Below, in pieces: positions 406 through 30,045 of a DNA stretch of 61,232 nucleotides (positions are counted from its first letter, which is position 1; the number at the start of each line of letters is the position of its first letter). The position numbers and the translations under genes were made by a program. Source of the DNA: Klebsormidium nitens (lineage: Eukaryota > Plantae > Klebsormidiophyceae); contig DF237498.1 of assembly GCA_000708835.1 (NCBI GenBank), forward strand, positions 1 to 61,232, in the 5' to 3' direction. Below the pieces are notes generated by a model. That model searched no databases and was not told the DNA's origin. It was given only the letters and a program-made list of their open reading frames with translations.

Positions 406-611
406 TACTACTACCTACCAACTAGTGCGTTACGGTTTGCACACTTCTTTCGGCGCAGAGCCGCCAGGGAGCAAACAACAGGTAGTTTGCATACTACCAG
501 CTGGCGGCAGTCTGCGCTGCATTGGCACTTTCCAGCCAGGGCGGTCCCTACCGGCCCTCTAGGCTCTAGGCCCCTGCTGCAGCCAATTCCCGCTCTTTCA
601 GGACGGCTTAA

Positions 612-3600
612 ATGGCTTCCCGCATCGCACAGCTGCTCGGGTTCCTCCGAACGGGAAGCAAGTCGAACGCCACGGCTGCTGTTGCTCGGGGAACTTTCTC
701 CTCCGTGTATCCCCAGGCGCCTTCTGGAGCTAATATCTCCAAATTGGCAGCAGCCCACTTCCTGGGATCGAGCTTTTCGAGATCCCTGCACACGAATGCA
801 ACCCCAATTCCGACTTTTGATACAGCCCATGTTGGCGCTTTCGTCCGACAGCTCCTGCAGCGCGCAAGCGGACCAATCACAGCCCGCCATGTCAGCAGCT
901 CCGCTCAGCAGTCCTCTGCTCGCTCTTTTGGCACGCTCGTGCGATCAGCTGTCTCAGATGGCAAGCTCTCCCTTGCCCGGCGACCAGATGTTCTGAGGAA
1001 AGCGGACAAGGGAGCGTTTTCATGCCAGGCGGGGGGCAAGAGATCTCAGTACACGGACGGGAGGGGCGTCACGCATTTTCGAGCCAGGGGGTTTCAGGGC
1101 GCATACCAGGATCCCAACAGGCGGCGCAGACTTTTGATCATCGTTGGTGTGGCAGGGGTACGTCTGTTGTTGAAATCGCCTTTTTGAACCTCTTTTCCCT
1201 TCTCTTTGTTGGTTTCGTCCAGCCTCTTGGTAATGTCAGTGACATTTCTTATTATGCTTCTCTCTTGCTTCCCAGCCGCATGGATAGTCGAATTGAATCA
1301 TGCATTTGAGATATGGGAAGTGATGTTGCTGCTTCTGATGATTCCTTGTTTGTGTTGTTGAAAGAGCACCTCAATGACATCGTAAGTGGTGGTGGTGGTG
1401 TTATCATAAGATTAGAAAGCACAAAGAGGGGTCATGACAAAGGATTCAATGCACGATCGTGTAAGAGAACCCTTGCCGAGCTATGCAGCATGCTTGGCCA
1501 TCGCATTTTCTTCCTGCATGAGTCCATTCGGTCGATTGGTGGCGCTTGTGAATTCTTTATCTGATCAGTGAATCAGAAGAGGTTATCCATACCGTGATGC
1601 CTTCGAGTTGCATGCAGCATGCATGATCATCAGAGAATCATATCCAAGGGAGAACCTTCCTTGGACAATGAAGAAAGTCACGGTAGGGAAGACTTCCCAT
1701 GTAAGAAGCAATGCGCGCCACAAAGGAAAACGTTTGGTGCTGTCACTTTTCGCAATTGAGTTCCTCTGTATGGATGTAACATTCCCGCAAGACGTGACCA
1801 ATAAGGCGCAATTCTCCATCTCTGACAGGTTCATTAGAAGTATTCTGGCAGTCGGTGGGAATTGTGCAGTTGCATGTACTGACAGGGCAATTGCTTGAGA
1901 TTGCGCAAAATCTGAAAGACCACCGGGCAAGGCATGTGATTGAGACACACCACTTGCGAGGCTGTGTCAAAGCTTACTCTACCTTGGTGCTGACCTTCTT
2001 GACATCGCCCATCCAATGGCACCCAAATTTCTCAGCTTACTACTTTTGGTGGGATAGTTCAAGAGAAGACAGTCGCGAAAGTGATTGTTTTACTCTTCGC
2101 CACCTCCGATTTACTGATTTACTTCCTTAGCCCCATTCGCAAGTTGTCAGTCTCTCGATGTTCCCCTGCAGTGATCTCAGTAAGTGCTTTAGAAACAATA
2201 GTTGCCATTGTTTAGAGGGGCTTGTTCGGACCAGGGTCGGATAGCAACGACCTCACCTTTTCGCGTTCACAGGGCGGCCTCTACATCTACTACGTGACCC
2301 ACTTAGAGGAAGTGCCGTATACCCACCGGAAGCACTTCATCGCCATCAGCCCTGCAACTGAGCGTGCGCTCGGGGAGCAACAGTTCCAACAGGTACGTGT
2401 CATGCAGAAAGTGGAGAAGCAAAGAATATTGAACACTGGTTTGTCATTCTATGGATCCGTACCACGATTGGAAGTCTATTGTTGAACCGCCATTAGACTG
2501 GAAAGCATTCCTTTCTATCTGAGCAACTCTGCTGCAATCTTGCGGACACTTAATGTGCATCGCCTTTGTCCTTCAATTCCTTCCTCCCTTCTCTATCTTC
2601 GCTTAGGAACCTCTCTGCTCTACTCTGCAGACAACAGACCAACATTCATACAACGTGAAGTCTCTCTGTGATTGAAGCTCTGTTTCTGGAACCTCACATT
2701 CCTTGGAGTTCGCATCGTAGCCAGTTTCGTCCTTCTCCCATTCGCGTCAGGCTCCACTTTGGTGATCACAAGATTTCCCAGGTCAAACCCGTCAACATCA
2801 AAGCCAGCCAGTCCTGATTCTCCTCTTGCGTCAATCCTGATCTCTTTGGAAGTTTCCCACCGAGCGTTCTTCTCGTTCAGATCGAGCTTCGAACCGGCAA
2901 CGACACTGTATGCAACAACACCCCAAACCCGTCGCTTTCATTCTTAAAAGCGCAGGCTGAAGGGCCCGACCTTTCCTGCGGATCGTTTTCAATCTTTTAC
3001 GATTATCTTAGCCTTTTTTAAAAATACCTCGTGTACAACAAGTTCCAGTCATCCTGCCCAATAACCACCCCCAAAGTTTTTGCCTCTCCTTCCAGTGGCA
3101 GGCTGCAAAGCTTGACATTCGTCGTGCCCCCTTTTATAATCCTATACCCCTGTGTCAGGCCGGTCGTGTAGAACAAGTTCCGTTTCTTAATGACATCCTG
3201 CCCGCGGCGCTCCCGCAAGTTGCAGAGCTCGTGCCTTGCTTATCAACTCTACGAGTCTTTAACCGGATATAATTTTCCCATGCAGATCAAGCTCCAGTTT
3301 GCCGACGACATCCTGCCGAATAACCACCCCGAAACCCGCCGCGTACGCAAGATCGCATCGCGCATCATCGACGCGGCGACTGCGGGCGTAGACGAGCCTC
3401 CCCAGAACAAGCGCGACGCGGACGGAGAACTGGTACTCGACACGGCCGTGGTGGTAGACAAGGAGGTACGCAGCAGTGGCCCTGTGCTAATCTTGGAGCG
3501 GTGTGGAAAGCCTTTTCTAAAGTACAGCACGCAGCTCTGTCACTCTGGCAGTCCACTTTGCAGCCCGGAAAGGGAAGGAACTCTTGAATGGCAGCCTCCT

Positions 3601-6600
3601 TCAGACTGACTCAACTCCGAGATTAGTTTCGTGGTGAGGGCTGGATCGCGCGTTTGGAAAGCTGTTGGATCGCAAACTCTGGTCGACGTACTTCCCATTC
3701 ATTTCGATTTGCTGCGGGGATCGGACAGTATACTCTCTTTGCGGTATAATTGACAACGCCTAGAAAGACAACATTCTGTGGGAAGTGGTCGGAGCTTGGT
3801 TCCACGCTCTACAATCCGTAAAGGAATAGGTGGGCAGAAGTTTGCTTGACAGGGGTTCATTTCATACCTTCTGAGAAAGCGGTTTTCGACCCGAGGACAT
3901 TCTCCCGAGCACTCCTCTGCCACCAGATACGGGCACGGAACTGTGTAACGGCTGTCGCAATCGACGCGAAAGGACTCACAGACCGCTCTGTCTGCTCACA
4001 GGATCAGCCAAAGAGGCGCGAACTGAAGCCGGGGAAGAGGCCGGTTCCGATACCCGGGGAAGATCACATGCATGGGGGGGCAGAAACGGCAGGAAAACGA
4101 GACCCCCGCGACGAAGAGCTGCAAGGAGTGGACCGGGAGATGCTGGAGGAAGGAGTGCACGGGGCGCCGGATAAAGGAGGTGGGCCGTCCAATTGGACTA
4201 CGGGCTTGTGCGGACGATTGTCAGCCGTCGGATCCGTGTTCGCGCATGTGTGTACAACCGTCGGCCGTTGAAGATGCCTTCTGTCCGCATGCAGGTAGTG
4301 ACTAGACGTTCTTTCTTCGTTCGGGGTCAAGCTTCCGAGAACACCTTCGCTCGTCTCTGGATCCTAGGGCTACATTCCGGGCCTGTAACTGTGTCCGGAA
4401 TCAAGCAGACGAGCTTGCGGCGCCCGATATGGAGTTTACCATCTAAGAATGCCTGTGGGCTGCTTTCCAATCAGATTCGCTTCTCACTGGGGGGGTTGCT
4501 ACACGGACCACCTGGAGAGCCCCTTCCCCCTCGATCTGAACCCCAATATTTCTGAACCAAACGAGAATCCTCTTAAAGTGTGTTTCTTTGGTTGATCTTT
4601 GGTCGGCCCATCGTTCAATCTAATGACCCCACCAGAACATCCTCTTCCTCAGGAGGGGGTGGCTAGATGGAGCACCTGAAGGGCCTGCGGTGGGAGGTGT
4701 TGGTGGTAGACAAGGACATCCTGAACGCCTTCTGTCTTCCGGGGGGGAAGAGCGTCGTCTTCGCCGGGCTCATCGTTTCATCTGATCCCAACCCCCCAAA
4801 ATATTTCCTTCCTCAGGGGGGGGTGGCTACACGGACCACCTGAAGGGCCTGCGGTGGGAGGCGCTGGTGGTAGACAAGGACATTCTGAATCCCTTTTGTC
4901 TTCGGGGGTGGAAGATCGTTTCTCTGGTTTTCTCATCGTTTTTTCTGACCCCAACCCCCCAAAACACTCTCTCGCTCAGGGGGGGGTGGCTACACGGACC
5001 ACCTGAAGGGCCTGCGGTGGGAGGTGCTAGTGGTTGACAAGGACATCCTGAACGCCTTTTGTCTTCCGGGGGGGAAGATCGTCGTCTTCACTGGGCTGAT
5101 CAAGCACTTCCCGACCTCGGATGAGATCGCCACCGTACTGGGGCACGAGGTCGGTTGCATCCACCGGGCTATGTTCGTTTGCTTCTTGTTTTCCTGGGGG
5201 AACGGGTGTTCATCGCCTTTGTGAAACGCGGTTGGTCGCATCAATTGGGCTCCACGCGTTTGCCGTGTGTTGTTTTTGAGGCACTTGATATCCATTCCGT
5301 TTGTAAAGGCAGGTCGAGCGGTTACGGAAAGCAGGGGTCTGTTGCACCCGTTTGTTGCGTGTCTTTTGGGGGCTGACAAACATTGCGTCTTTGAAAGCAG
5401 GTTGAGAGGTGACGAAAGTTAAAGTGGTTGTTTCGGACTTGGCGAGTCTGACTACTCTGTGCCCATTTGCTGGGTGATGCTTCGGGAGAGTGGTGTCCAG
5501 TCCGTTTGTCAAAGCGAATTGAGAACAAAATCAAATCATGCAAAGGTTTGGGAAATTGTGGTTCTGCCTTTGACACGAAGAGGAAGAAGGAAGTTTGGAG
5601 TAGTCCTTCTTTGGGCTTGGAGAGTTCCTGACCAAGATTCTGAGTGCTGCTGCTTGCCTCAACTTTCATGTTTGCTCGTCCTGTGACCAACACATGTAAA
5701 TTTCTGAAGGTTTAAAGCGCAACTTTTGGATCCTGAACTGAAGTTCATCAACCTCTCGTATTATGAGACCCAGCAACATTTGATCTGTTGAGAAGTTGTA
5801 TACCAAGTCGCGATCTTGAGAGCGATTTGTCGCTGGGTTTTTCTTCGTCTAGAGACATTTCATGAAAGCGGACTCTGCAAGGGGAGGAAGCTGTCACACG
5901 GCTGCTGGAACTAGAAGATTTGAAGCCTTTGAAATCATATTATGCATTCCTTTAGGTCAAGCCGCTTACGGCTGAACACGCCACGTGGGTTAGAGAAAGT
6001 CGTCCAAGTGTTGAATCCAGTGCCCCCGAATGCTAAAGCCAACCCTCTTACACCCCAAGAACCTCGCCCCTTCCGGATAGGTGGATCACAGGAGCGCGGG
6101 CCACGTGGAGGAACAGTTGTCGTCTAAAGAACGGCAGTCCCAGATACATATTTCTCAAAACCGTTACATTGTAAACCCAGGTTTCCTGATCGAAAACCGC
6201 ACCCCTTCCCGACAGGTGGCTCACGGGAGCGCGCGGCATGTGGGAGAGAAGTTGTCGTCGGGTTTCATCGTGTCCGTTCTGGAACTCGCCGCGTACTTCG
6301 CGGGTCTGCCCATCGAACTCATAGTCCCCGCCTCGCAATCGCTGATAAGCCTACCCAACTCGAGAAAGTGAGTGCGGCCGTGGCACGTAGGGCCGCCGGT
6401 AACCCATCTCAAACCCTATCCCTAACCCTCCCTCAACCCTTGCCTGTCTTTTCCTTATTTCGCATGCCTTGTTTGGCCGGGACGACCTTGAAAGAGCTCG
6501 TTAAAACACTGTGCTAACCTCCGTTCCTCCGCCTTGAAGTTGTGTCGCTTTCTTGATAATTGAACGGGCCGAACGCCAAAGAAAGAGTCCGGGAAAGCGG

Positions 6601-9600
6601 AGGCTTCAGGACTTTGATCTGCAGGTGGCGCGCATTGCCAAGGGGCTCTCCTGGAGTCCTTCACTCCTTCGGGACTTGACGAGGTTTGACTTTTGACCAG
6701 GGTTTCAGGATATCTTGCAGGTAGCCTAGGTCGTGCCGTGCGATGCTGCCAAAAACTTTGCCGAGAGCACTTCATTTTTGTTGAAATTGTTGAAAATCGG
6801 TTGAGAATCCGGTTTAGGTTTGACAAACCGTATGCTTTGTAGCGTTTGCTCTCGGCTTTACCCTATGAATTCTTTATAACCGGGGGGGCTGCGTAATCTA
6901 CAGGTAGCCCACATCACGGCGCGCCGCTTTTTGCCGCAAATCTCTCCCAGCCCTCTTCGAAGGGTCCTCGGATTTTGGGGTTTGGATAACCGGGGGGTTT
7001 GCATAACCTACAGGTAGCCCACGTCGTGGCGCGCCACATTGCCGAGAAGCTCTCGCAGAATCTCTGGTTGGTGTTTGGCGAGATACTCGCTCTGCAGTTC
7101 GTGGGGGATCCCTATCTGGTCGACTACATTGCCACCCTGGCGTTCCGCCTGCGCTACTCGCGCAAGTAAGCGAGCGGGGTTGAAAGCGGGTTAGAGTTTC
7201 TGGGAATGGGTTAAGGGAAGTTTCAAATGGTGGGGAATCCCTCTTCGGGTTGATAACATTGCCACGCTGGCGTTCCGCCTGCGCTACTCGCGCAAGTAAG
7301 CAAGAGGGTTTGGATGAGTTTAGGGAGACAATGGGGTACAGATATTTCATTCAGTTTTTGGATTCCTTTTTCGTTGACTACCATTGCTACGCTGGCAATC
7401 TGTCTGTGCTACTCGCGCAAGTAAGCGAGAGGGTTAATGTTTGAGGGAATGGGTTACCAACTTTACAACTCGTTGGGGATTGCTATCTGGTCGCCCCTAT
7501 ATTGCCACGCTGGCGTTCCGTTTGCGCTACTCGCGCAAGTAAGCGAGAGGGTTAAGCTTTGAGGATATGGATTACCGACTTATACAAGTCGTTGGGATAT
7601 TTGGTCGCCTGTATTGCCACGCTGGCGTTCCGCCTGCGCTACTCGCGCAAATAAGCGCGCGGGTTAAGACGGGTTAGGGTTTGTGGGATTGGGTTAAGGC
7701 AACTTTATATCGCAGGCTGAGGTCGCTCAAGGCGCTCGGTTTCTTGCGCCTGCGCAAGCAAGCGAGGGTCTAGGTCGAGGCGCGTTAAGAGAACCGCTCA
7801 AAGCGGTTCTGTTGACGGGTTAAGCGGATGTTGGAGTCGATCCAGCTGGCTCAAGGGGAGGGGCTAACGGCGACAGAAAAGCATTCAGTTTGGAAGTGTC
7901 CACGGCCAGCATGTCACAAGATTGGTTCTGGTTCAGCTTAGAAGGTCTCAATGAGGAAAAGCACGGTTTCCAAGCAATTCGCAAATGCCTAACGAATGGT
8001 TTTGGGTTCTTTCAACCAGACTGTCAAGAGTCCAGTGCTTTGAGGTTCTCAATGGTCTGCTTTCAACGGGGTGGCTTCGCCTACTGCACAAGGAAAAGGA
8101 AACCGGGTTTCACAACTGACACTACAGGCGGGGTTGCTTATAGAAGCAAATCTTGCGGCACCTAAACTCTTCGGTCGCCCTGACTCGACCAACGAATTCC
8201 TTCGGTTGAGTGTGGCAGAACAGCAATGTGTGGAAGCAGATTCAGAACACACCAAAACGAGCCGTTTACGCCCTGTACAGATTCAGAAGGGAGGCGGATA
8301 AGATCAGGCTGCGAAAGTGCACGTGATTGCCAGAATAACAGGGATCTCAACCTCTCTTTTCTACGCAATTCAGAGTTGCATGCGGATTCGCTTGGGCTAG
8401 TTTAGAAGCATGCAACAGTCAAGACCGCGAATGACAGACTGCAAGGACGCGTCTCCGTTTCCAGTGCAGGCTCAAATTTGAAGGCCGCCTAACATTGCGC
8501 GGATGCGTGCGTGGCCAAAGGGCACACCTCGAAACTCTTAAGAGCCTGATACTCTTGACGTCTTATACCACGCTAATGGATTGTTGGTGCGTTTTCTCCT
8601 GATCATATGCAGGCGGACATTCGAGGCGGATGAAGCTGATCCAATCTACCAGCAGTCGAACAAGGTCACCTTCTTTCAATTGCTCTTACATCTTTTTCCT
8701 CTGCGAGGTGGAATGGAGGCGAAGACGATTGGGCTGACCTTCGATCTGATTACAGAGCCTATTCATCGTGGAGATTACGTGAAAGATCGTCTGTCAATGA
8801 AATCGTAAAGCTCCATGAATCCATGCAAAGCACATAAACCTCCACTCCTTTCGTATGCAGGCTTGAATCGGAGGCGGATAAGATAGGGCTGATCCTGATG
8901 GCGGCTGCGGGCTACGATCCTCGCATCGCGCCTTCCTTCTACGCGGTGAGTTTCTGCACGTGTCCGATTGCCACGTGTCACCCACGTGCTTATACCTCCA
9001 CCACCCAAATCTCCCGTCTACAACAATCCCTCTCTCGGCTTGAGCCGTTCGGATTCGGTGGAACGATTTGTCTGCTCTTTTTTCACTCGGAGCTTTGCTC
9101 GGCGTTTCGTGTGTATGGTCATCTGTTCTCACCTGGAGGACATGTGCCACCTTGTGGTAATGCCACGTACAAAGGTGACACGTGTCCCTTCAAGCGGCGT
9201 CGCTTTGTGTGCCAATCAACCTGGACCGCTCATTCTCGTCGCTTCAAGTTTTCAAGGTCCGGCTCATCATCGGCCCGGAAGACCGAAGGGATTCTGCCGT
9301 TTCGAAGGGATCCCCTTGAATTGCCCAAAGCGGCACCAATCCGCTTATACAACGAAGTGTTGTCTCTGTACTTCCCTTGAAAGATACCAATGGAAATGAT
9401 AAGCACTTGGCACGTTCTGTGCGATCTTCAAACTATTTGGTAACAGGGAGGGGGCCTTTAGCGATCGTCGAACTCCGCGGTCACCAGAAGTTTCCATCCT
9501 TATGTTCAGAACTACTTCTCCGCTCAAAGAGACCACTGGCACGTTTGCACCCGGTAGATTGACTTTTTGCCTTGACACCTCCCCAAATCCGCTTGCTCGA

Positions 9601-10942
9601 GAGTTGTCTGCTTGAGCGACAGTTTCACTCGCGCTTTTCGGGTCTGCAGAAAATGGCGCAACTGGAGGGACTCCCCGAGTACTTCCAGTACCTGTCGACG
9701 CACCCTGCGGGCCAGTGAGTCGCTGCCCGGTTCATTCTACTATCTCTCGCTTGTGCAGAATCGGCTTCGCCAAGAACCGCGCCAAGTTGGTGTTCATGTC
9801 TTTAAAGTGTGCGCACAATGCTGGTTGGGGCGATTGATAGTACGACGATAGAATCCACTCGCTCGTCCAAGAAAGTTTTCAGCTTTTTCTCTGTACGTAA
9901 CTTGCAAGCCGAGATTCTCGAGCGTTCGGTTTCATGGATCGCGAGCGTTTGACCGTCTTATGACCGTACAAAGCGCTGTTTTGGAGTTGTCTTCTTCCAC
10001 TACTGGAGTCTGCAGTACGGCGCAGGCTAGCTTTGCCCTGGACAGATACTTCAAGAAACAAGAAGGGTTCCTGCATTGTGAACCGCTAGCGTGAACTGGC
10101 TACCGCTTTTTTGGAAAACACCCCAAGATTGTCGAGGCACCAATCATAATTGGGACCCTTTTCTTTGAAATGGCACAGGCTGTTGTGCTCGCAATTGAAG
10201 TTGGTCAGGGCGTCCGGCATTTGCGGGCCAAATTAAATGCATGGTTATATCATGACTTCTCGAACGGCGTTGATCCTGAAAGAATGGCTGGAAATGCGGC
10301 CAGATTGAAGATCCAGGCAACGGGCGCGTGCAGACGCAAAAACAATCTGAAGGAGTACGCGTTGATGATCAAAAACTGGGAATATTATCTTTTGTTGGCG
10401 TCGGAATTGTGAATCTGAATGAGAGTTCTGCATGTTCTTTGCGTCCCTGCAAATCACAGACCTTCTCCTAGCTCCTTTTTCCAGGCAACAAGCGCCAGCA
10501 AAGGGAACGAAGAAGGCATTGGATGAGCACACGGTCCAAGCTCGACGGAGTGTTTGACCGGATTTCCATATCAAACGCTCTTTCTCTAGAAGCCGCCCAG
10601 AATATCCAGCTTACTCAGACGCTGGTTCTTTGTTGCTACTCTGGCAACGGGCGCGCGCTCACGCAAGCGAAGGTGATGGAGAAGGCCTTGGATTCTCAAG
10701 TACGCGGCCAGGGTCCAAGCACGACAAGCGTGAAGAAATCTTCTGAAAAATGCATTTCCGTGTCTGATCCAACCCAAGACGTTTCCTTTTCCTTTTTCCC
10801 CTTCTTTATATTGAACGTTTCGTTGTTACGCAGGCAACGGGCGCGCGCGCTCGCGCAATCGAAGGTGATGGAGGAAGCGGTCCGGATCTACGAGAGGACG
10901 CTCGAGAAGCAACAGCAGCACAAGTTCTTTCTCGGTTTCTAG
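612..10942 (+). CDS. OMA1: Mitochondrial metalloendopeptidase OMA1-like (peptidase M48), spliced
   Basis: Phase-consistent GT-AG exons: 612-1157, 2273-2392, 3286-3465, 4002-4179, 4980-5149, [6216-6367 or 7014-7165], 8861-8945, 9650-9714, 10834-10942. Motifs EEVPYTHRKHF, WEVLVVDKDILNAFCLPGGKIVVFTGL, EIATVLGHE|VAH (HExxH), ESEADKIGLILMAAAGYDPR, YLSTHP. The N-terminus is Ser/Arg/Ala-rich, like a transit peptide. Confidence 0.92.
4484..4979 (+). repeat. Three degenerate tandem copies of the acceptor plus 5' part of OMA1 exon 5
   Basis: Copies of (cag)GGGGGTGGCTACACGGACCACCTG.. near 4485, 4650 and 4812 (the last two extend to ..TTGTCTTC..GGAAGA), ~165-bp period, upstream of the intact exon at 4980. 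Confidence 0.85.
6216..6367 (+). CDS. OMA1: OMA1 alternative exon 6a (VAHGSARHVGEKLSS...LPNSRK)
   Basis: cag acceptor, gtgagt donor, 152 nt, phase 0 to 2, no stop, completes HEVAH. Confidence 0.75.
7014..7165 (+). CDS. OMA1: OMA1 alternative exon 6b (VAHVVARHIAEKLSQNLW...FRLRYSRK)
   Basis: cag acceptor, gtaagc donor, 152 nt, phase 0 to 2, no stop. Closer to the land-plant OMA1 pattern (ARH.AE...NLW...RLPFSRK). Confidence 0.8.
7166..7760 (+). repeat. Four or five tandem copies of the 3' end plus donor of OMA1 exon 6b
   Basis: ATTGCCACGCTGGCGTTCCGCCTGCGCTACTCGCGCAAGTAAGC and variants near 7258, 7383, 7501 and 7614, ~120-bp period, with G-rich GGGTTA-containing spacers. Confidence 0.85.
10480..10833 (+). 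repeat. Degenerate copies of the start of the last OMA1 exon
   Basis: GGCAACGGGCGCGCGCTCACGCAAGCGAAGGTGATGGAG near 10645 and a weaker copy near 10485. Confidence 0.6.
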
Positions 10943-12890: not shown

Positions 12891-15800
12891 TCACGCCTTG
12901 ACGACGTAGACATCCCTCTGGATCTCCGTGTCGGGATGCTGCGGGTCGAAGAATTGCGCTGACGGCAGCAGTGACGACAGCAGGACGGCGTTCGTCAGCC
13001 CCGCGGGGGGGGACGGGCTCGCCACGTCAGCGCTAACCCCCCACCCGATGAAACCCAGGTAGTTAGTGTTGGAAAGCGGCTCAACGCAGGTGGTTAAGGT
13101 GCAGGTTTGCGCGCCCGGACCAGAGGGGGTGCAGCAGGAGAAGACGTAGGGGGAGCTGGTTATGACGGTAACCCCGGTGGATTTGTGCTGGGCGATGAGT
13201 AGGGGGACTCCCCCAGCGGTGACTTTGTCGAGGGCGTACCAGTCGAGGGTCTGGAAGGAGACGGAGGGGGGGACCTTGCTCTGGGCCTGGATCAGGCCGA
13301 CCTGTGGGGGGGGGCAAAAGGAAACGCGTTGGGGAGGGGGGGGGGGAGGACAACACGTTTGAATGTGATACGTTCCGGCTTTTGAGCGAAGCGGAAGATG
13401 AACGGGAGAGTCTCGCAGCTCAGTTTGACGGGAAGCGATTGAAGTCCCAGAATTGGAGTACAAGGCAGCATTTGAAAGGTCATACGCTTGTCACAATCTC
13501 CTGCATCGATCCCCTCAGAATTCGATGCAAACGGAACGGTCGGGTTCGGAGCAGCATACGCCGCTCATCGCACTTAGGAAGAGTCAAGGTACGTGCGTCA
13601 TTCTGAAACCACTTGAACAAATTTGAACCTGGGTCCAGCGATTCGGGTTGCTTGCTTGTAGATGAAAGAAAAGAAACAAGTGTAGATGAAAGAAGAACAA
13701 GAAGGAAAAGAAAAGGCAAACCTTCGTCAGCGTGGGGCAAAGGCTGCGTTCAGCTTTCCGACTTTGCTTGCACGAAGGCATATGCTTCGATCTTTTGACA
13801 TCCGACTACACGCTTCGATGGAAAAGCGCTCTATATGTATCGACCGGCGCTCAGTCATAAACCAACGTCAGGTCCGTAAGATCTCTCAGTAACCAGCCGA
13901 AGGTCGTCTACATTTTACAAATAAGGGCCATGACGGTGCAGTTCCCAGCACTTTGGTGCGAGTATGTTTTTGTCTCCACGAGAAGAAACACTCACACCGG
14001 AGGTCGGACCAGTTCTCGCAGATACAGGACCGAAAGAACCAGGATTACTATAATCTGGTACGACGATGAACTCGTCTCCAAGAAACGATGAAGCGTTGAA
14101 GATACGAATCAAAGGAATCTGCATGAGTTTGGTCCCACCAGAGTCTCGGCTTCATGATACGCAACACTCACGCTGCCAGCACTACAGGCCAGGATATTCT
14201 CGAACTACACTCTCCAAGAATCTGGTGCCACTATTCTTTGTTCCTTCTCTCAGGAAGCGACCCGAACAAACAAACACGAACAAAAGCCACTCACGCTTGC
14301 TGCGCTGTAGGTCAGGATGTTCTCCTTGACGAACCCTTGCAGGCGACCCGCCTGCGTGGCCACGGCCGCAAGGGTCGCCCCCGCGGTAATATAATAACGG
14401 AACTCCAACGTGCCTCCGTTGGCGGGGATTCCAACCGGCCGCTTGATGGTCTCGAGAATGTTCCCATAGACCGTGTTCGGGTCCAGGAACTTGCCGAACC
14501 GGACCTCGCACCCGAAGTTGGAGGGACCCCCCTCGAAGGGCGATTTGGGCGCGAACATGACGCCGAGCGCGCGCGCGAGCGGGCAGTTGGCGGAGGCGAA
14601 GGCCATCCAGCCGTTGGTCTGGGTGCCGCAGTTGAAGAGGCCCTGTGGGGGAGAGTCCGAACGGGTCAGCAAACCCCCCTTAGAGGAGAACCAAGTTTTC
14701 TCCGATCCATTTTTTACCTTCAAAACCGGAAGGGGCTGCCGCCTCCCCGAGCCCCCCCGCTTTTTCCTCTCTGGCCCTTTGTTCTCATTGCATGTGAGGG
14801 GTCGACAACTTGGAGCGCTTCTGAATGCACAATGGTGGAGGCGAAGGCCATCCAGCGGTTGGTCTGGGTGCCGCAGTTGAAGAGGCCCCGTGGAGAGAGT
14901 GACGTTGTGAACCGGTTAGCAAGCCCCTTCTGGAACGATAGNNNNNNNNNNNNNNNNNNNNNNNNNNNNNNNNNNNNNNNNNNNNNNNNNNNNNNNNNNN
15001 NNNNNNNNNNNNNNNNNNNNNNNNNNNNNNNNNNNNNNNNNNNNNNNNNNNNNNNNNNNNNNNNNNNNNNNNNNNNNNNNNNNNNNNNNNNNNNNNNNNN
15101 NNNNNNNNNNNNNNNNNNNNNNNNNNNNNNNNNNNNNNNNNNNNNNNNNNNNNNNNNNNNNNNNNNNNNNNNNNNNNNNNNNNNNNNNNNNNNNNNNNNN
15201 NNNNNNNNNNNNNNNNNNNNNNNNNNNNNNNNNNNNNNNNNNNNNNNNNNNNNNNNNNNNNNNNNNNNNNNNNNNNNNNNNNNNNNNNNNNNNNNNNNNN
15301 NNNNNNNNNNNNNNNNNNNNNNNNNNNNNNNNNNNNNNNNNNNNNNNNNNNNNNNNNNNNNNNNNNNNNNNNNNNNNNNNNNNNNNNNNNNNNNNNNNNN
15401 NNNNNNNNNNNNNNNNNNNNNNNNNNNNNNNNNNNNNNNNNNNNNNNNNNNNNNNNNNNNNNNNNNNNNNNNNNNNNNNNNNNNNNNNNNNNNNNNNNNN
15501 NNNNNNNNNNNNNNNNNNNNNNNNNNNNNNNNNNNNNNNNNNNNNNNNNNNNNNNNNNNNNNNNNNNNNNNNNNNNNNNNNNNNNNNNNNNNNNNNNNNN
15601 NNNNNNNNNNNNNNNNNNNNNNNNNNNNNNNNNNNNNNNNNNNNNNNNNNNNNNNNNNNNNNNNNNNNNNNNNNNNNNNNNNNNNNNNNNNNNNNNNNNN
15701 NNNNNNNNNNNNNNNNNNNNNNNNNNNNNNNNNNNNNNNNNNNNNNNNNNNNNNNNNNNNNNNNNNNNNNNNNNNNNNNNNNNNNNNNNNNNNNNNNNNN

Positions 15801-18800
15801 NNNNNNNNNNNNNNNNNNNNNNNNNNGATGGTTTGGGACGGTTTCCTCTGCGTTGTGACGGAAGTGAAGGGCATCCAGCCGTTGGTCTGGGTGCCGCAGT
15901 TCGAAGAGGCCCTGCGGGGGGGGATAGTTTGGACGGGTTAGAAAGCGTTTTACGGAAAAGAGGTGAAAGAACCCAGAGTGTTTTTGAGTGAACTGTGGCG
16001 AGCCGAGGCCCTCCAGCTGTTCAGTTGTGCCGGAGTTGAAGAGGTCCTGCGGGGGGGATACTCTACCGCTCAAAAGCCCCTCGGAACGAGAGTGTTTCGT
16101 CCCCTCAAGATTTTCAGTAGTAGAAGGCCGTCCGGCCGCGCTTTTGGCTGCCGCAGTTGAAGAGGCTCTTTTGGGGAAGGGAGCTATACCAATAAATACC
16201 GCCTGGGGCAAGAGGCGTTTCTGAGAAACAACAGTGGTCTGCAGGATCCGAGCAATCATTCCAGAGAAACTGAGCCCCCGCCTGGTCCCCGGTGCCTTCC
16301 CACAGGTATGCTGACTCTTTGAGGCAGAGATTTCGACTTTCTTCAAAACCAAGTGGTCGGCGGCAACTTCCAAGCAAAAAAAATACAAAAAGATAAAATA
16401 GAAAGACCCTCACCTGGTCCCCGGTGCCTTCCCCCGGGTACGCGTAGTTCCAGCACTGCCCGGTGGGGCAGCTCGCGTGGTTGTAGTACTCGCACGCCTC
16501 CCAGAAACAACAGTTGTTGGCGGCAAAAATCCAAGATAAGTTTTTTAGAATTAGACCCTCACCTGGTCCCCGGTGCCTTCCCCCGGGTAGGCGTAGTTCC
16601 AGCACTGCTCGGTGGGGCAGCTCGCGTGGTTGTAGTACTTGCATCCGCCGGGGCAGCCCGTGTCGGGCGAGATTCTGCTGGTGGGCACCGAAAGGGCGTA
16701 GTGGGTCAGGTCGGGGCAGTAACCCAGGCCCTGCCACGGCAGGTCGATGTAGTCCACGGGCACACTGCGGGGAAGAAAAAAACAAGGTTAATTTTCGTGG
16801 TTTGATAACCGGATTTTACTTGGGACTAAATGGGGTAGTGGGTGAGGTCGGGGCAATAACCCAGGCCCTGCCACGGCAGGTTGATGTAATCCACGGGGAC
16901 ACTGGGGATAGAGAAAGTTAAGGGTTAGGATTTGACGTTTGAAACCAAACATTCAGTTAGGGCTGAAAGCGAGGTTCGATAACCGGCAATTCAGTCAGGT
17001 CGAAATGCGTAGTGGGTGAGGTCGGGCAATAACCCAGGCCCTGCCACGGGAGGTCGATCGTGTAGTCCACGGGCACGCTGCCGGGGGGGGGAAAGAGACG
17101 GTCTTGATAACCGGGAAATGGTTAAGATCGAGATTTGCGTAGTGGGTTAGGTTAGATAGAAGCCCAGGCCCTGCCACGGGAGGTTGATGTAATCCACGGG
17201 GACGCTGCGGGGGAGAAAACGTACGAGGTTATGTTTTGTGGTTTGACAATCAGGTTTTAGTGCTGAATGGGTCAGGTCGGGGCAATAACCCAGGCCCTGC
17301 CACGGGAGGTCGATGTAGTCCACGGGAACACAGCGAGGGGGGGAAAGCAAGGGTTTAGTTGACGGAGCTGATAAGGACTGAAAGTGCGTGGTGGATTTCA
17401 GAACGGGGCAATAACCCAGGCCCTGCCACGGGAGGTCAATGCACTCCACGAGGAGGCCTGGGGGGGGGGAGAAAAGTCAAGTTCAGAATGAGGTTCAGAT
17501 TGAGGTTACCGAAAATCTGGTCANNNNNNNNNNNNNNNNNNNNNNNNNNNNNNNNNNNNNNNNNNNNNNNNNNNNNNNNNNNNNNNNNNNNNNNNNNNNN
17601 NNNNNNNNNNNNNNNNNNNNNNNNNNNNNNNNNNNNNNNNNNNNNNNNNNNNNNNNNNNNNNNNNNNNNNNNNNNNNNNNNNNNNNNNNNNNNNNNNNNN
17701 NNNNNNNNNNNNNNNNNNNNNNNNNNNNNNNNNNNNNNNNNNNNNTGAGGTTACCGAAAATCTGGTCAGGACCGAAAGTGCATAGTGGGTCAGGTCGGGG
17801 CAGCCCTGCCACGGGGTTCGGTGCAGTCGACGGGCACGCTGGGAGGGGACGAAAAGAAGAGCATTTTGGTCTCGAGATTCAGTAACGGGAGGATTCAGTT
17901 CGGTTTGAAGGCAGATGCAGGTCGAAATCTCGTCTCGCCGTCTTGCTTTTCTGCAAGTCAACCTATCCTTGATCCTGCAACGTAGCAATCTTAGGCATCA
18001 TCTTGAGAAAAGACACGGCAGGGGATCTAGTTGACAAGGAGATCAAGGTCTGGGGTCTTGACAATTGAGGTTTTTGAGATTGAAATCAAGGGAAGAGCGA
18101 CGGCCAAAAATAATCCCCTCCCTTCTCGCGGGTCAAACGTCGAATGTTCGATATCCGATATCCGATATGCGACATTAAGGGAAGCATATTCTTCCCTGCC
18201 CAAAGGCTCCGTGGCTTGGGAAAGGTAGGATTGCAAATCTGGTCCTTTCCAAAGAGACAATTAGCAGAGTCTTGTCCGAGAGAGAGAGGCGAGCAGATTG
18301 GGATGTTCACGTGTTGGGAATCTCAGTCGGCTGCTGCTCCAGAGATGCCAACGAAACTTTAAGGTGGGCACGCTTAAGTAGAAAGACAAGTGATAGAGCG
18401 GAATCCGAGTACACCGTCTCGATCATGAACAGAGCAGCAACCTGTCCCTGCTTGGATTGCTCAGTGTTTGCTGTTAGGTTGCTAACAGGACAGAACCCGC
18501 CATCCGTCTGCATAAATGCCAGGCAAACCCTCAGTAAACCCATTTCTGGACCAACATCAAGGCTTCAAATGCGTTGTTCTAGAACTCACGTGCCCACGTT
18601 GGTCCAGATCCAGGTTAGCTCAAACGAGCCCTGACCCACGTCGCGGATCCAGGTTTGGAGGTACAGGTTTGAGCGGTACCGCTTGTCGCCACCGAAATCG
18701 ATTCCGGTGAATTCCGGTCGGGGCCACGAAAGGAGCGCCACCCCGTCTCCCCCGGGGGAGACTTGGCTGCACGGGGAAGACAACCGGGCACTTCAGTCGG

Positions 18801-21800: not shown

Positions 21801-24800
21801 TGCAATGAGGTTCGACTTATGAATTATAAGCTCCGTGGAGGGGAGGATTATTCTACCAAGCAAAGAAGGACTGAAGTCCGGATCCAGATACGCACGCGCT
21901 CCTCAAGCAAATCCACCCGCCCCCCGGGCTTGACACGAAATTATGCAAACGGAAAATTTCTCAACGAAAGCGAACGGCTTCTGCAACGGCTTCTGCAACT
22001 GCGAACGTTCAGATTTGAGCTCGAGGGACGTTGGTATGAAACGGACGGTCGAGACTGAGTGTGGTCAAGAGAGCGGAATTTTAGTCGTGGTTGGGAAGTT
22101 CAATTTTTCCGGTAACTCAGCTGGCAAAAGGTGCAATCGAGGTTCTGCGGAGACCTTTTCGAACTTCAGTTGTGGAAGCTGACTTGCAGCACAACTGGCC
22201 CAATCTACGGGAGAGGATTCTGGCATAGGAACCACGATTTATGATATCTGGGACGATTTAAGGATGATCACAAGGGAAGTTTGGTAATTTCTGGTCTGAG
22301 AAGGCAATCACACAGCTCCGAGCTTGAACCACTCTTCAGCAACTTCGACTCTCTGAGCAAGCAGAACGCGAACAGCCTTCATACCCCGCGCCTTTATTCC
22401 TCGGGTTCGTCTCACATCCCCCCCTTGACTGAATTTCTTCACTTCCCTTCCCTTGATTTCCATTCTTTCTTTCCCTCTGTTCCCCCTCATGCAAACGGCG
22501 TCGAGCACTTCTTCCACTAAAAAAACCGCTTAAAAGGTCGCGAAATCGACCCCCTTTGCGTCTTTTTGATTTTCCAACTTCCATGAGAGGAGTCTTTAAA
22601 CTCACGGGTTTGGCGACGCCGGGAAGTCCGTGAAGCAGTTGACGTTGGCGCCCGTGTTGAAAACCGGGGACGAAGAAGGGGAGCCGCTGGTGGGTGCGTT
22701 TGTGGGGGGGTTGGTTGTGGGGGCAGTCGTGGGGGCAGTTGTGGGCGCACTTGTGGGGGGGGCATTTGTGGGGCCACTCGTCGGGGGGGGGTNNNNNNNN
22801 NNNNNNNNNNNNNNNNNNNNNNNNNNNNNNNNNNNNNNNNNNNNNNNNNNNNNNNNNNNNNNNNNNNNNNNNNNNNNNNNNNNNNNNNNNNNNNNNNNNN
22901 NNNNNNNNNNNNNNNNNNNNNNNNNNNNNNNNNNNNNNNNNNNNNNNNNNNNNNNNNNNNNNNNNNNNNNNNNNNNNNNNNNNNNNNNNNNNNNNNNNNN
23001 NNNNNNNNNNNNNNNNNNNNNNNNNNNNNNNNNNNNNNNNNNNNNNNNNNNNNNNNNNNNNNNNNNNNNNNNNNNNNNNNNNNNNNNNNNNNNNNNNNNN
23101 NNNNNNNNNNNNNNNNNNNNNNNNNNNNNNNNNNNNNNNNNNNNNNNNNNNNNNNNNNNNNNNNNNNNNNNNNNNNNNNNNNNNNNNNNNNNNNNNNNNN
23201 NNNNNNNNNNNNNNNNNNNNNNNNNNNNNNNNNNNNNNNNNNNNNNNNNNNNNNNNNNNNNNNNNNNNNNNNNNNNNNNNNNNNNNNNNNNNNNNNNNNN
23301 NNNNNNNNNNNNNNNNNNNNNNNNNNNNNNNNNNNNNNNNNNNNNNNNNNNNNNNNNNNNNNNNNNNNNNNNNNNNNNNNNNNNNNNNNNNNNNNNCATT
23401 TGGTGGGGCCACTCGTCGGGGGGGGTTTGATGGGCTTGGAGTCGTGGTGATGGACCCCCCCGGACAGAAAGGCGTGTCGCTTGGGGTGCCGGAACACGTT
23501 CCGGTGCAGCAGGCAAACTTGCTGCCGTCAGAGCTGTAACAGCTGTGGCGCACAAATGGGGGGTTCAGTGCGAAGCCCACGTTTCGCAAAGAGGGCCCAA
23601 AGCAGAGCCTTCAGAAACGAACGGTTTTTCCTTTACGAAGGGTTGCATGGAGCAGATTTGCGTCCCCGAGTGATCTTGAAGTCTGGTTGCGTGTTCCTTT
23701 ATTGAGGGACAACTCTCTTGTCTGCAAAAGAGCCTGTTATTCCATTTTTGCGGACTGTTTGAAAGGAAAGGCCTTACAACCTGTGTGCACTGCCCTTTTA
23801 TGAATTGCGGACAACTCCCTTCCATAAGTTGGAAGCTTTCTTGTTTGGCAAAGATCGAGACACTGCGCTCAAGCCCCGACCGTTTCCATAACTCAGAGAG
23901 TCTGTGCGACGTACTCTCTACGATTGCACAGCAAGAGTGGAGGGGGGAAAATGCAGGATTACGGATGGCACAAATTTGAAAGGCTGAAATTTGCAAGGCT
24001 GACACGATGAGAAGAGGGTCGAGGACAAGCGCATAACGTCACTGCTGGAAGCTTACGCGTTAGGGGCAGATGGGTAGTCTGTGAAGCAGTTCACGTTGGC
24101 ACCAGTGTTGAAAATCGGGGTCCCGCTTATTGGCCCACTTGTTGGGGGGGGGTTGGTGGGCCCACTTGTTTGGGGGGGGTTAGTCGGCCCGCTCGTCGGG
24201 GGGGGGTTGGTCGGCCCACTGGTCGGGGGGGGATTTGACCCCCCCGGGCAAGACACAACGGCCCCTGGGTTGTTGCCACATTGCCCGGCACAGCAGACGA
24301 ACTGGCTGCCATCAGCGTTGTAACAGCTGCAAAGCAAGCACTTTTTCGAAGTCAGGAGGTTCGGAGTGTCAAGTTATTGCTGTCGTGTGAACCTAAGACC
24401 GGAACACGAACTGTTGGACTTTGCGGAGACATGACCGTTTCAGCTTGATAAAATGTGCAGGAGAGTCATCCGTTGAAGTTTGAAATGGGGTAGAATGTAC
24501 ACATTGTCAAGCAAAGGTTTCACTTTGGGGAGGCAACAAATGCAAGACTAGCAACTGCAATAACAAGACCAACTAAAGGGTAGCTAAAGGTAGATAGGAC
24601 CAGAAAATACAGAAGGTGAGAGGAGACAACCAGAGAGAAGTGATGGAAAGAGGTGGAAAAGGGGAAGGTGGATGGGATTATGGTGGACATGTGGGTGTTA
24701 TGGGGGTTTGTCACTGAATTAGTGGTGGTTTTTGGGGTTTGCCATTGGGATAGTGGTCTACATTGAATAAAGGAGCAAGCTTACGTGTTTGGGGTGGCAG

Positions 24801-26778: not shown

Positions 26779-29035
26779 GTGAAGGGGTTCTCGAGCTCAG
26801 AGGAACTTTCCGACGGATCTCTGGGAAGAGAAGCGGAATGGAAAAAGAGCTGGTGGAAATCCCACCTGATGATCTAGACCAAAGCTGGTGGATCATCAGC
26901 TCCAAAGTGAAACGTATCTGGGGGAGGTTGAAGGGCAAGAACTCCCTGGAAAGCGTCTGCAGAGCTCGTGCCTTGCAGCTAGCAAACCGGCGACTTTTTC
27001 TCTCCCAACGACGTGCCGTATGTTTCTTCCACATGGACTGATGCTGGCACACAACACTGGAACTGGAAGCAATGCCGTCAGCAACGTATACTAATAGCTC
27101 GAACAGCACTCCCCGCTCAGTCTGCTGACCTCAGCTGAATCCCGACAGGAGTGGCCGGCGCCCTCGCAGGGCCGCCAATTGTCAGCTGGCGGTGCTTTCA
27201 AGTATTCAGAGCCGTGTCACGTTCAGCTATAGCTGGCAACATCGGAATGTTGACAGAATATTATAGTAATACCCCGACATACCTATTCCTCGCAGCTGAG
27301 CTGGGGAGTCGGCGCCAAGCAGAGCGTGCAGTGAACCTGTACCTATGTGTGCTACTATAACACCATGTGCTTCTGGCACTGCAAACTGGCAGGCGGGCGA
27401 TCCCCCCCATCAAAACACGACTGCGCGCACGTTGTGCAAACGTACCAGCTGGAAGCATTTGGCTGCACCTACCGTAATATTCTGCATATTTAATTAATAT
27501 AGGTACCTATATATGCCATTGGCATGCCGCCTGCGCTGGCTTCCTCCCTAGCCTAGGGGCACGCCGCACAAGTTCCTGCATGGCTACCTAGTCTAGCTCC
27601 AAGCTTGCGCAAACCTGGTATACTAGCCCCGGGCCCAGGCGACCACGTCCGCAAAGAATTCAACGCGTAAGACGTCGAGGATATAGGCCGCCGGATTCGC
27701 TGCTCGCTGCAGACTCGGAGCAATTTTCGCTTGCCAAGTGGCGGCTGTGCGCGTCATCGTCAGACGGCCCGCCGAGGGTGTGCACAGTGCACAGTGCGGC
27801 ACTGTCACTGATCAGTGCACACAGTCACCAGTGTGCACTGAGCACTGAGCAGTGAGCAACTCATAAAACGTGGACGGTGTGGCGCGCTGTGGAGGGCTTG
27901 CGGGGTGATTCCGTGCGCGACACGTGGTTGTGGAACGCCGGCTTGACCGGCGGCCTGTACGGACGTCGGCGAACGAGCCTGGAGGCCGCATGAAACTCAA
28001 GAAATATATAATAGTAAGAGTAAGGTAACCGCACTGTGACGGGTAGGGTTAGTATGGTGGTTAGGGTGAGTACGGGTGCGGAGCGGGTGTTTCATTTAAG
28101 GTTAGGGTTTTTAGTGTTAGTCGGAGCTTACTGTTATCTTGGCTTACTATCGGGAGGAAAGAATCGTNNNNNNNNNNNNNNNNNNNNNNNNNNNNNNNNN
28201 NNNNNNNNNNNNNNNNNNNNNNNNNNNNNNNNNNNNNNNNNNNNNNNNNNNNNNNNNNNNNNNNNNNNNNNNNNNNNNNNNNNNNNNNNNNNNNNNNNNN
28301 NNNNNNNNNNNNNNNNNNNNNNNNNNNNNNNNNNNNNNNNNNNNNNNNNNNNNNNNNNNNNNNNNNNNNNNNNNNNNNNNNNNNNNNNNNNNNNNNNNNN
28401 NNNNNNNNNNNNNNNNNNNNNNNNNNNNNNNNNNNNNNNNNNNNNNNNNNNNNNNNNNNNNNNNNNNNNNNNNNNNNNNNNNNNNNNNNNNNNNNNNNNN
28501 NNNNNNNNNNNNNNNNNNNNNNNNNNNNNNNNNNNNNNNNNNNNNNNNNNNNNNNNNNNNNNNNNNNNNNNNNNNNNNNNNNNNNNNNNNNNNNNNNNNN
28601 NNNNNNNNNNNNNNNNNNNNNNNNNNNNNNNNNNNNNNNNNNNNNNNNNNNNNNNNNNNNNNNNNNNNNNNNNNNNNNNNNNNNNNNNNNNNNNNNNNNN
28701 NNNNNNNNNNNNNNNNNNNNNNNNNNNNNNNNNNNNNNNNNNNNNNNNNNNNNNNNNNNNNNNNNNNNNNNNNNNNNNNNNNNNNNNNNNNNNNNNNNNN
28801 NNNNNNNNNNNNNNNNNNNNNNNNNNNNNNNNNNNNNNNNNNNNNNNNNNNNNNNNNNNNNNNNNNNNNNNNNNNNNNNNNNNNNNNNNNNNNNNNNNNN
28901 NNNNNNNNNNNNNNNNNNNNNNNNNNNNACCAACTTTGACTATTACAACTATTATCTTTCTTGAGAGTTATGGCCGCCGCTGGAGTCTGGACGGTCGAAA
29001 GCACGGTCACGACTCACGAGTCACGGCCCACGGGA

Positions 29036-29230
29036 ACTGGCGACATCTGTGTTCACTTAGGGCCGTGTTCACTTCAAAACGGTTCCCGGGAACGGATAGG
29101 GTTGGCAGGGGGGTTAGGGTGGATACGGGTGCGGAGCGCGTAACTGTGTTAGTTTAGGTTTTTAGTTTGCTTTTGCCCCGGGTGGGTACCTAAGTGAACA
29201 CAAGCTAAAGTGAACACAAATGTCGCCAGT
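29036..29230. mobile_element. Short inverted-repeat element (MITE-like)
   Basis: ~39-bp imperfect arms at 29036-29074 and 29192-29230, each with two GTGTTCACTT subrepeats. The core resembles sequence at 28040-28115 and 20485-20530. No clear TSD. Confidence 0.45.
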
Positions 29231-29487
29231 ATCATGTATCGCCCGTGGGCGACCGCCTATGCGTATTTAAGTTCACTGGATCCGCGAATATCAATGATTA
29301 GGTACGTCAGTGGTCACGTGACGGTAAAATCGTCACGCGCGTCGCCGACGTGCGCACTGGTTGCCGTCAACCGTACCTCACGCATTTTACGGGCGACGCC
29401 GACTTGAAGTCGAGTCAAAAGAGTCCAATGATCAATCATCAACGTTCAGAATATTCATTGAATCAATGGTGATCATTTGCTGGTGGG

Positions 29488-29743
29488 CCGTACTAACAGA
29501 GCGGGGTCAAGGAGAATCAGTTACTTCGAGCTACCGGGGCCGGGGAGGATTTTGGAAGGGGTGACGTGGCGAGGTTCAGGGTTTTGACCGGGGCCTTCCT
29601 AATCATGATTGGCCGAATGGAGCCTAGCCCGGGGTTTTGCCCCTAAACCTCGCCACGTCAGCCCTTCCAACAGCGTCCCCGGCCCCGGTCCTGAAATTTT
29701 ACTGATTCTCTTGGACCCCCGCTCTAACACTGTAACAGTACGG
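29488..29743. mobile_element. Fold-back (MITE-like) element
   Basis: Imperfect ~110-bp inverted arms (CCGTACT..AGAGCGGGG..CCGGGGCCGGGG..TGACGTGGCGAGGTT and its reverse complement) around a ~40-bp loop. Confidence 0.6.
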
Positions 29744-30045
29744 TAGGGCAGTAATGCAAAACACTGTGTTTTAATCCATTACCATTATTCTTCTCTAACA
29801 GACGGAAGTTCATCGATCCTAGTTCCTTTCTTCCTTCAAGTTGCTCCCTATTAAAACGACAACACAGCCTGGCTCTTTCAACTTCTGAGCACTTCGTTTT
29901 CCAACATCACAATTGCAAGAGGAATCAAGACTTTGCGCACTATAATATCCTAGTAATAGCTCAGAGGGTGAAGGTTTTCAATCTTGCCTCGCACAGGCGC
30001 CTCTTTGGTGTACTTCTAGCTTCCTCCTTGCTCGATTTATTCCAA

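What the first reader, a model, noticed from the sequence alone, without database searches (positions are those of the whole stretch)
6216..7165. Mutually exclusive exons rebuild the active-site segment of OMA1
Two divergent exons of identical length (152 nt) and phase (0 to 2) each supply the second His of HExxH and the following hydrophobic segment. Including both or neither shifts the frame, so only one can be used per productive mRNA. One gene could make two mitochondrial quality-control proteases with different membrane or substrate regions. I know of no report of this for plant OMA1, but could not search.
Basis: partly seen in the sequence, partly recalled or inferred. Interest (0 to 1): 0.7.

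Follow-up and report, generated by a model that had tools for sequence, protein, structure and literature searches.

The report
Duplicated alternative exon pair in algal OMA1
A green-alga gene for the mitochondrial stress protease OMA1 carries two diverged copies of the exon that completes its zinc site; evolution has kept both as coding sequence, but the four RNA data sets I could check use only the first copy in finished messages.

Summary
Exons A (6216-6367) and B (7014-7165) are each 152 nt, AG/GT-flanked and in the same phase. Each supplies the second His of HExxH plus the segment up to the third zinc ligand. Skipping both or including both gives an immediate stop.

New evidence cuts two ways.

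1. Three related algal loci (L001, L002, L084) all keep both exons at 152 nt with intact splice sites. dN/dS is 0-0.11 for A and 0.10-0.25 for B, against 0.06-0.15 for the neighbouring exon U. Introns are unalignable, or about 81% identical in the closest pair. B is therefore not a dead copy.

2. RNA contigs of four runs from four studies show only U>A and A>D junctions. U>B was never seen. One run has a B-type donor>D junction that cannot be told from a junction at a nearby repeat copy.

Land-plant OMA1 genes have the same exon boundaries but a single exon, which is B-like. The default exon here is the lineage-specific one.

About 40 intron bases after A's donor are nearly invariant and include a hairpin. 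B's acceptor is conserved-weak and G-rich.

Verdict: a real, conserved exon pair with the architecture of mutually exclusive exons. B's productive use is inferred, not shown. It is a new member of a known kind. The scan noted similar exon pairs elsewhere in this genome.

The parts
4980..5149 (+). Exon U of the OMA1/M48 gene. It ends with ...GHE, supplying His and Glu of HExxH.
   Evidence: Pfam PF01435 E=8e-13. RNA joints 4179>4980 and 5149>6216.
6216..6367 (+). Exon A, the upstream copy. It is the exon used in mRNA in all four runs. It carries the second His, a hydrophobic stretch and LPNSR(K).
   Evidence: Joints 5149>6216 and 6367>8861 at the highest depths in 4 of 4 runs. 100%, 82% and 84% aa identity in L001, L002 and L084. 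dN/dS 0-0.11.
6368..6407 (+). Nearly invariant intronic element directly after exon A's donor: GTGAGT, then a 6-bp GC stem whose loop varies, then (C/T)GGTAAC.
   Evidence: Nearly invariant in window, L001 and L002 (two differing columns plus a one-base loop indel over the first ~40 bases) and in L084, while the rest of the intron is unalignable between window and L002. Occurs once in the window. The hairpin is predicted in all three, but fold z-scores are not significant.
6992..7013 (+). Weak, G-rich acceptor region of exon B: a G-run, then ...ACAG.
   Evidence: Only 7-9 of 20 pyrimidines and 7-9 G upstream of B in all four loci, against 12-16 pyrimidines for U and D.
7014..7165 (+). Exon B, the downstream copy and the land-plant-like version. 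It is intact and constrained, but was not seen spliced to exon U.
   Evidence: 92%, 74% and 76% aa identity in L001, L002 and L084, always 152 nt with AG/GT. dN/dS 0.10-0.25. 13 aa differences against 24.4 +/- 2.2 expected if neutral. Covered only by the unspliced contig 6339-7166.
7258..7693 (+). Array of four partial copies of exon B's 3' end plus donor ('echo' copies). The copy ending at 7295 shares its last 29 nt with exon B.
   Evidence: family D2. The joint reported as 7295>8861 in run X1 has only 28 letters on its upstream side.
6060..6124 (+). Partial copy of exon A's acceptor plus its first ~45 nt.
   Evidence: family D4 (80% identity). A matching copy lies in L001 at 3049-3093.
6876..6930 (+). 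Partial copy of exon B's acceptor plus its first ~28 nt.
   Evidence: family D5 (84% identity).
4489..4919 (+). Three partial copies of exon U's acceptor side. The acceptor at 4817 is used in two runs.
   Evidence: families D1 and D3. Joint 4179>4817 in X1 and X2.
8861..8945 (+). Exon D. Its first base completes the Lys codon, followed by L-E-S-E-A-D, the motif holding the third zinc ligand.
   Evidence: Joints 6367>8861 and 8945>9650. Pfam M48 weak hit. Alignment of a relative to 3C37 and BepA.
9650..9715 (+). Exon E (...YLSTHPAGQ).
   Evidence: Joint 8945>9650 and a loose end at 9715. Conserved in all loci.

Best explanation
This is an old tandem duplication of the 152-nt exon that follows the ...GHE exon of an OMA1-type M48 zinc protease gene in a streptophyte alga.

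Shown:
- Both copies are intact, of equal length and phase, and each encodes the second His of HExxH plus about 45 residues up to the exon that carries the third zinc ligand.
- Both are kept under protein-level purifying selection in at least three related lineages.
- Only single inclusion keeps the frame.
- Exon A is the default exon in mRNA.
- The intron that contains B is retained far more than its upstream neighbour.

Inferred:
- Exon B, which resembles the single exon of land-plant OMA1, is used instead of A in some condition or life stage not sampled here. That would give a second protease isoform with a different segment between zinc ligands 2 and 3. In the solved M48 protease BepA this region covers the active site and is proposed to move to admit substrate.
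- The choice would be set by B's conserved weak, G-rich acceptor, which makes skipping the default. The nearly invariant hairpin element at A's donor could also modulate use of A's 5' splice site.
- Transcripts with both or neither exon hit a stop at once and would be removed.
For: Anatomy.

RNA: U>A and A>D junctions in 4 of 4 runs from four studies.

Conservation of both exons in L001, L002 and L084, with splice sites and length kept:
- B dN/dS is 0.10 (window-L001), 0.17 (window-L002) and 0.25 (L002-L084), against 0.06-0.15 for exon U.
- B shows 13 aa changes where 24.4 +/- 2.2 are expected if neutral, and 4 where 10.1 +/- 1.6 are expected (P<=3e-4).
- Differences by codon position are 14/4/21 (p=0.004).
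- In the L002-L084 pair B is 93.3% identical against ~81% for introns (P=2e-5).
- Only the + reading frame used here, together with one other + frame, stays open in all four loci. The minus frames do not.

Land-plant loci share the exon boundaries with one B-like exon.

Nearly invariant 40-nt element after A's donor. Weak G-rich B acceptor in all loci.

Intron A-D is retained at about 10-50% of exon depth, against about 1-3% for intron U-A.

Role of the corresponding region in BepA: bioRxiv 10.1101/2020.07.07.192476 and the alignment.
Against: No 5149>7014 junction appears in any of four runs, although contigs of depth about 2 are reported where the gene has depth 170-300.

The unspliced contig 6339-7166 runs unbroken across B's acceptor in all four runs.

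The only B-type donor junction is in one run. It is indistinguishable from the echo donor at 7295, and in that run it sits on RNA that still holds the A-B intron.

The word search with exon B found no RNA-derived fragment, though that search has limited reach.

B's dN is consistently higher than A's.

No conserved long-range pairing partner was found for the invariant element.
Confidence: 0.6

Rival explanations
1. Exon B is kept as a regulatory decoy and never yields protein. Its splice sites and its array of donor copies would trap part of the pre-mRNA in an intron-retaining, stop-containing form, tuning OMA1 output.
For: High retention of the A-D intron (10-50% of exon depth) against about 1-3% for the upstream intron. 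A B-type donor>D junction at depth 96, against 132 for A>D, in run X1 on RNA that keeps the A-B intron. No U>B junction. Donor copies recur after B in relatives.
Against: A decoy needs splice signals, not an open frame with family-typical residues. B shows synonymous-biased change, half the neutral number of amino-acid changes, no indel and no stop in four loci.
Confidence: 0.2
2. Exon B is the former constitutive exon, recently replaced by A and now decaying. Its apparent constraint would be left over from the time before replacement.
For: B is the land-plant-like version. A is the only exon seen in mRNA. B's dN is 1.6- to 4-fold higher than A's in the two comparisons where A's dN is above zero; in window-L001 A's dN is 0.
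Against: Constraint on B is seen on every branch tested, including the two close pairs window-L001 (dN/dS 0.10) and L002-L084 (93% against 81% intron identity). A is equally conserved in all of them, so both exons coexisted under selection throughout.
Confidence: 0.12
3. B's conservation is imported by gene conversion from an unseen paralogue with a B-like exon, or the pair is an assembly artefact.
For: None was found. It is listed only because the whole genome could not be searched.
Against: RNA contigs reproduce the window base for base across both exons. Three independent loci have the same layout. No second Klebsormidium-like M48 hit appears among 2966 matches. No contig with loose ends at B's borders was laid. 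The scan's notes list no other OMA1/M48 gene in this genome.
Confidence: 0.03

Closest known systems
Mutually exclusive exons born by tandem exon duplication (as reviewed for animals; competing-structure model in Genes 2018;9:356, PMC6071210)
   Same: Two adjacent homologous exons of equal length and phase, where only single inclusion keeps the frame, and both copies are conserved as coding sequence.
   Different: Only one copy has been seen in productive mRNA. No docking/selector pairing was found. Exclusion here rests on frame, with stops, plus a weak acceptor.
Land-plant mitochondrial metalloendopeptidase OMA1 genes
   Same: Closest named relatives. Identical exon boundaries around HExxH (...GHE | V.H...SR | .E.EAD) in moss-like and seed-plant loci. 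Exon B is 40-50% identical to their exon.
   Different: Land-plant loci hold one exon at this position. The alga holds two and by default uses the one that land plants lack.
BepA and Geobacter M48 peptidase (PDB 6AIT, 6SAR, 3C37)
   Same: Same fold family by sequence. The duplicated exon corresponds to the stretch between HExxH and the Glu ligand, which in BepA holds the alpha6 loop that covers the active site.
   Different: These are soluble bacterial enzymes encoded by intron-less genes. The lid role is transferred here by alignment only.
'Exon echo' copies and other duplicated-exon pairs noted by this scan in the same genome
   Same: Head-to-tail partial copies of exon edge plus splice site flank U, A, B and D. 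A whole-exon copy looks like the same process on a larger scale.
   Different: A and B are full-length, old (45% nt identity) and constrained, whereas echoes are partial.

Membership tests
Mutually exclusive exon pair (tandem exon duplication) | Adjacent homologous exons of the same length and phase | tested here: met
   152 nt each, phase 0 to 2, similarity z about 5.5 over shuffles.
Mutually exclusive exon pair (tandem exon duplication) | Both copies maintained as coding sequence | tested here: met
   dN/dS is 0-0.11 for A and 0.10-0.25 for B in four loci. Simulation and intron controls support this.
Mutually exclusive exon pair (tandem exon duplication) | Mature transcripts carry one copy or the other, never both | tested here: inconclusive
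   A-only transcripts appear in 4 of 4 runs. No A+B joint was seen. No U>B joint was seen. One ambiguous B-type donor>D joint was seen. Only contigs of four runs could be laid.
Mutually exclusive exon pair (tandem exon duplication) | A mechanism that enforces exclusivity | tested here: met
   Frame: including both gives AAG TAG and including neither gives GCT TGA. RNA-pairing control was looked for and not found.
OMA1 / peptidase family M48 | Match to the M48 profile, with HExxH and a downstream Glu ligand motif | tested here: met
   PF01435 E=8e-13 on exon U. HE lies in U, xxH in A or B, and ESEAD in D. The relative aligns to 3C37 and BepA over these motifs.
OMA1 / peptidase family M48 | Orthology to OMA1 rather than to other M48 members | tested here: met
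   Best relatives by exon U are proteins that sources name mitochondrial metalloendopeptidase OMA1, and they share intron positions. This rests on names and similarity only.
OMA1 / peptidase family M48 | Mitochondrial inner-membrane location and stress-activated proteolysis | not testable with these tools
   No localisation or activity data are available. The joined protein model was not built.

The most novel reading that the evidence does not exclude
Exon B is a conditionally deployed, land-plant-type 'lid' for OMA1. A factor acting on the nearly invariant hairpin at A's donor and on the G-run at B's acceptor would switch the alga from the A-form to the B-form protease under a particular stress or life stage. 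The locus would then preserve the two-exon stage of an exon replacement in the streptophyte lineage.
Probability: 0.3. Interest if true: 0.7.

Novelty: new member of a known kind. Interest (0 to 1): 0.5.

Why it matters
Well-supported mutually exclusive exons are, to my knowledge, uncommon in the green lineage. My paper searches found no report of one for OMA1 or for Klebsormidium.

This pair swaps part of the catalytic helix and the whole stretch between two zinc ligands of a mitochondrial quality-control protease. A real second isoform would be a natural experiment on how that region sets activation or substrate access.

It also poses a sharp puzzle that simple RNA work can settle. The ancestral-looking exon is conserved but silent in the data at hand, while the lineage-specific exon does the routine work.

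Tried and rejected
1. My starting guess was that A is a decayed copy and B the real exon. RNA junctions rejected this.

2. Pseudo-exon status for B was rejected by selection tests.

3. The idea that A belongs to the chlorophyte/fungal 'LPNSR' flavour, and so that the pair is very ancient, is not supported. The free tree puts A there with support 48. A tree with A and B as one clade has a higher log-likelihood by 6.6, and the AU test does not reject it (p 0.67).

4. Docking/selector RNA pairing: duplex scans and exact 8-mer complement scans gave no partner at a conserved place. Hairpin fold z-scores are not significant.

5. Finding the species' own full-length protein or B-containing RNA fragments failed:
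- The word search with a fern OMA1 returned only land plants in the top 120.
- The search with exon B returned only L001's ORF.
- The search with P0054 gave one new relative, which led to L084.
- The 50%-representative search held no full-length Klebsormidium OMA1.

6. The metagenome scan gave no further Klebsormidium-like locus, only land plants and bacteria.

7. An antisense ORF over B is not conserved.
Full report
**What is there**

The + strand of 600-9800 holds an intron-rich gene of the M48 zinc-peptidase family. Exon U (4980-5149) matches Pfam Peptidase_M48 (E=8e-13) and ends with ...GHE.

By exon U, the closest relatives among 1.8 billion representatives are at most 75% identical. Those that carry names are called mitochondrial metalloendopeptidase OMA1 of ferns, mosses, liverworts and seed plants. 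Earlier notes of this scan name the genome as Klebsormidium nitens. I did not verify the species, but a streptophyte alga fits the hits.

**The observation**

Exons A (6216-6367) and B (7014-7165) are both 152 nt, both preceded by CAG and followed by GT, and both enter in phase 0 and leave in phase 2. Each starts V-A-H, which completes HExxH, and ends S-R with a split Lys codon. That codon is finished by the first base of exon D (8861-8945), which continues L-E-S-E-A-D, the motif with the third zinc ligand.

The copies are old. Identity is 45% at the nucleotide level (z about 5.5 against shuffles) and 16/50 at the residue level. Including both reads AAG TAG. Including neither reads GCT TGA.

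**RNA evidence**

The contigs are spliced at GT..AG, so they are RNA.

All four runs show 5149>6216 and 6367>8861 at the highest depths. Two runs have a single 1525-nt contig joining the exon before U, exon U and exon A. Exon A is therefore the default exon.

No run shows 5149>7014 or 6367>7014. The unspliced contig 6339-7166 crosses B's acceptor unbroken in all four. Contigs of depth about 2 are listed where the gene has depth 170-300, so productive B use is probably rare in these samples. The tool itself warns that contigs show presence, not absence.

Run X1 has a joint reported as 7295>8861 at depth 96, against 132 for A>D. The last 29 nt before the donors at 7165 and 7295 are identical, and the joint has only 28 letters on that side. 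It may therefore equally be 7165>8861, the true B donor. Even so, in that run it sits on RNA that keeps the A-B intron.

The A-D intron, which holds B, lies at about 10-50% of exon depth. The U-A intron lies at about 1-3%.

**Conservation**

Two short ORFs that read from exon U into the intron (P0023, P0054) and a third (P0265) led to genomic loci of relatives:
- L001 is a Logan contig whose exon U is 96% identical in protein.
- L002 (with L003 carrying the same exon hits) and L084 are JGI metagenome contigs with exon U at 86% and 84%.

All carry both exons, each 152 nt, with AG and GT kept. Between the window and L001 or L002, introns do not align except at exon edges.

| Comparison | Exon A dN/dS | Exon B dN/dS | Exon U dN/dS |
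|---|---|---|---|
| window-L001 | 0 | 0.10 | 0.10 |
| window-L002 | 0.10 | 0.17 | 0.15 |
| L002-L084 | 0.06 | 0.25 | 0.06 |

For B between the window and L002, 39 base changes gave 13 residue changes where random placement gives 24.4 +/- 2.2, and 69% of simulations gain a stop. The changes fall 14/4/21 by codon position (p=0.004).

L002 and L084 have alignable introns at about 81% identity with many gaps. There B is 93.3% identical without a gap (P=2e-5) and A is 95.3%. Minus-strand frames over B are not kept open.

B is therefore constrained as coding sequence on every branch I could test. The constraint is somewhat weaker than on A.

**Comparison with other lineages**

Plant-derived metagenome loci (moss-like L004-L006, seed-plant-like L007-L020) have the same intron positions around this exon but only one exon, and it is B-like (40-50% identity to B, at most 38% to A).

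Pairwise scores over 78 relatives favour B in 63. A scores best against a subgroup with L-P-N-S-R that includes a Trebouxia and a fungal protein.

The free tree of the 50-residue segment places A with that subgroup at support 48. A tree with A and B as sisters has a higher log-likelihood by 6.6, and the AU test does not reject it (p 0.67). The age of the duplication is open. A lineage-specific duplication followed by fast early change of A is the simplest reading.

**Possible control elements**

The first ~40 intron bases after A's donor are nearly invariant in all four loci. They read GTGAGT, a 6-bp GC stem whose loop varies, then (C/T)GGTAAC. That is tighter conservation than at A's own third codon positions.

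The hairpin is predicted in each sequence, but the fold energies are not unusual for this composition. I found no conserved distant partner.

B's acceptor has the poorest pyrimidine tract of the five exons in all four loci (7-9 of 20) and a conserved G-run. This fits default skipping of B.

**Function**

In the solved M48 protease BepA, HExxH lies in helix alpha4 and the Glu ligand in alpha7. The region between them, with the alpha6 loop, covers the active site and is proposed to move to admit substrate (bioRxiv 10.1101/2020.07.07.192476; alignment of a relative).

The duplicated exon encodes exactly that interval. A has the more hydrophobic 19-residue window (Kyte-Doolittle 1.80 against 1.29). 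Swapping exons would thus change the lid or membrane-facing part while keeping the catalytic residues. This is inference by alignment.

**Verdict**

The pair is real, old and conserved, and it has the architecture of mutually exclusive exons. A is the working exon in the data at hand. B's productive use is required by its mode of evolution but was not observed.

I put 0.6 on a genuine conditional alternative exon, 0.2 on a non-coding decoy role, 0.12 on a recently retired exon and 0.03 on conversion or artefact.

The paper searches run found no report of this for OMA1 or Klebsormidium. The kind (tandem exon duplication with exclusive use) is well known, for example PMC6071210. This scan has noted two other duplicated-exon cases in the same genome.

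**Limits**

- Only one runs search and one read-laying run were allowed.
- All laid data were contigs.

Noticed in passing
window 4489-4919 (U acceptor side), 6060-6124, 6876-6930, 7258-7693, about 8270-8304 and 8603-8631: Every exon from U to D is flanked by head-to-tail partial copies of its own edge plus splice site, with periods of 110-165 nt. Relatives have such copies at the same boundaries.
   Followed up: partly
window 4817 (acceptor of a partial copy of exon U): This echo acceptor is used in RNA. Joint 4179>4817 appears in runs X1 and X2 at depth about 65, and it then reads on into the true exon U out of frame. Echo copies are therefore not always silent.
   Followed up: partly
window 6368-8860: The intron holding exon B is retained at 10-50% of exon depth in four runs, against about 1-3% for the intron before exon A. 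It behaves like a detained intron.
   Followed up: partly
window 14001-16000, 22001-24000, 28001-30000: Islands of 31-37% G+C lie in a window that otherwise has 49-61% G+C.
   Followed up: no
protein libraries: No full-length Klebsormidium OMA1 protein containing exon U turned up in either protein library. The public gene model for this locus may be missing or mis-built, perhaps because of the echo copies.
   Followed up: no
L002 and L084 (JGI metagenome 3300060284): Two syntenic Klebsormidium-like contigs from one sample differ by about 19% in introns. They could be two species, or two diverged haplotypes or homeologues.
   Followed up: no
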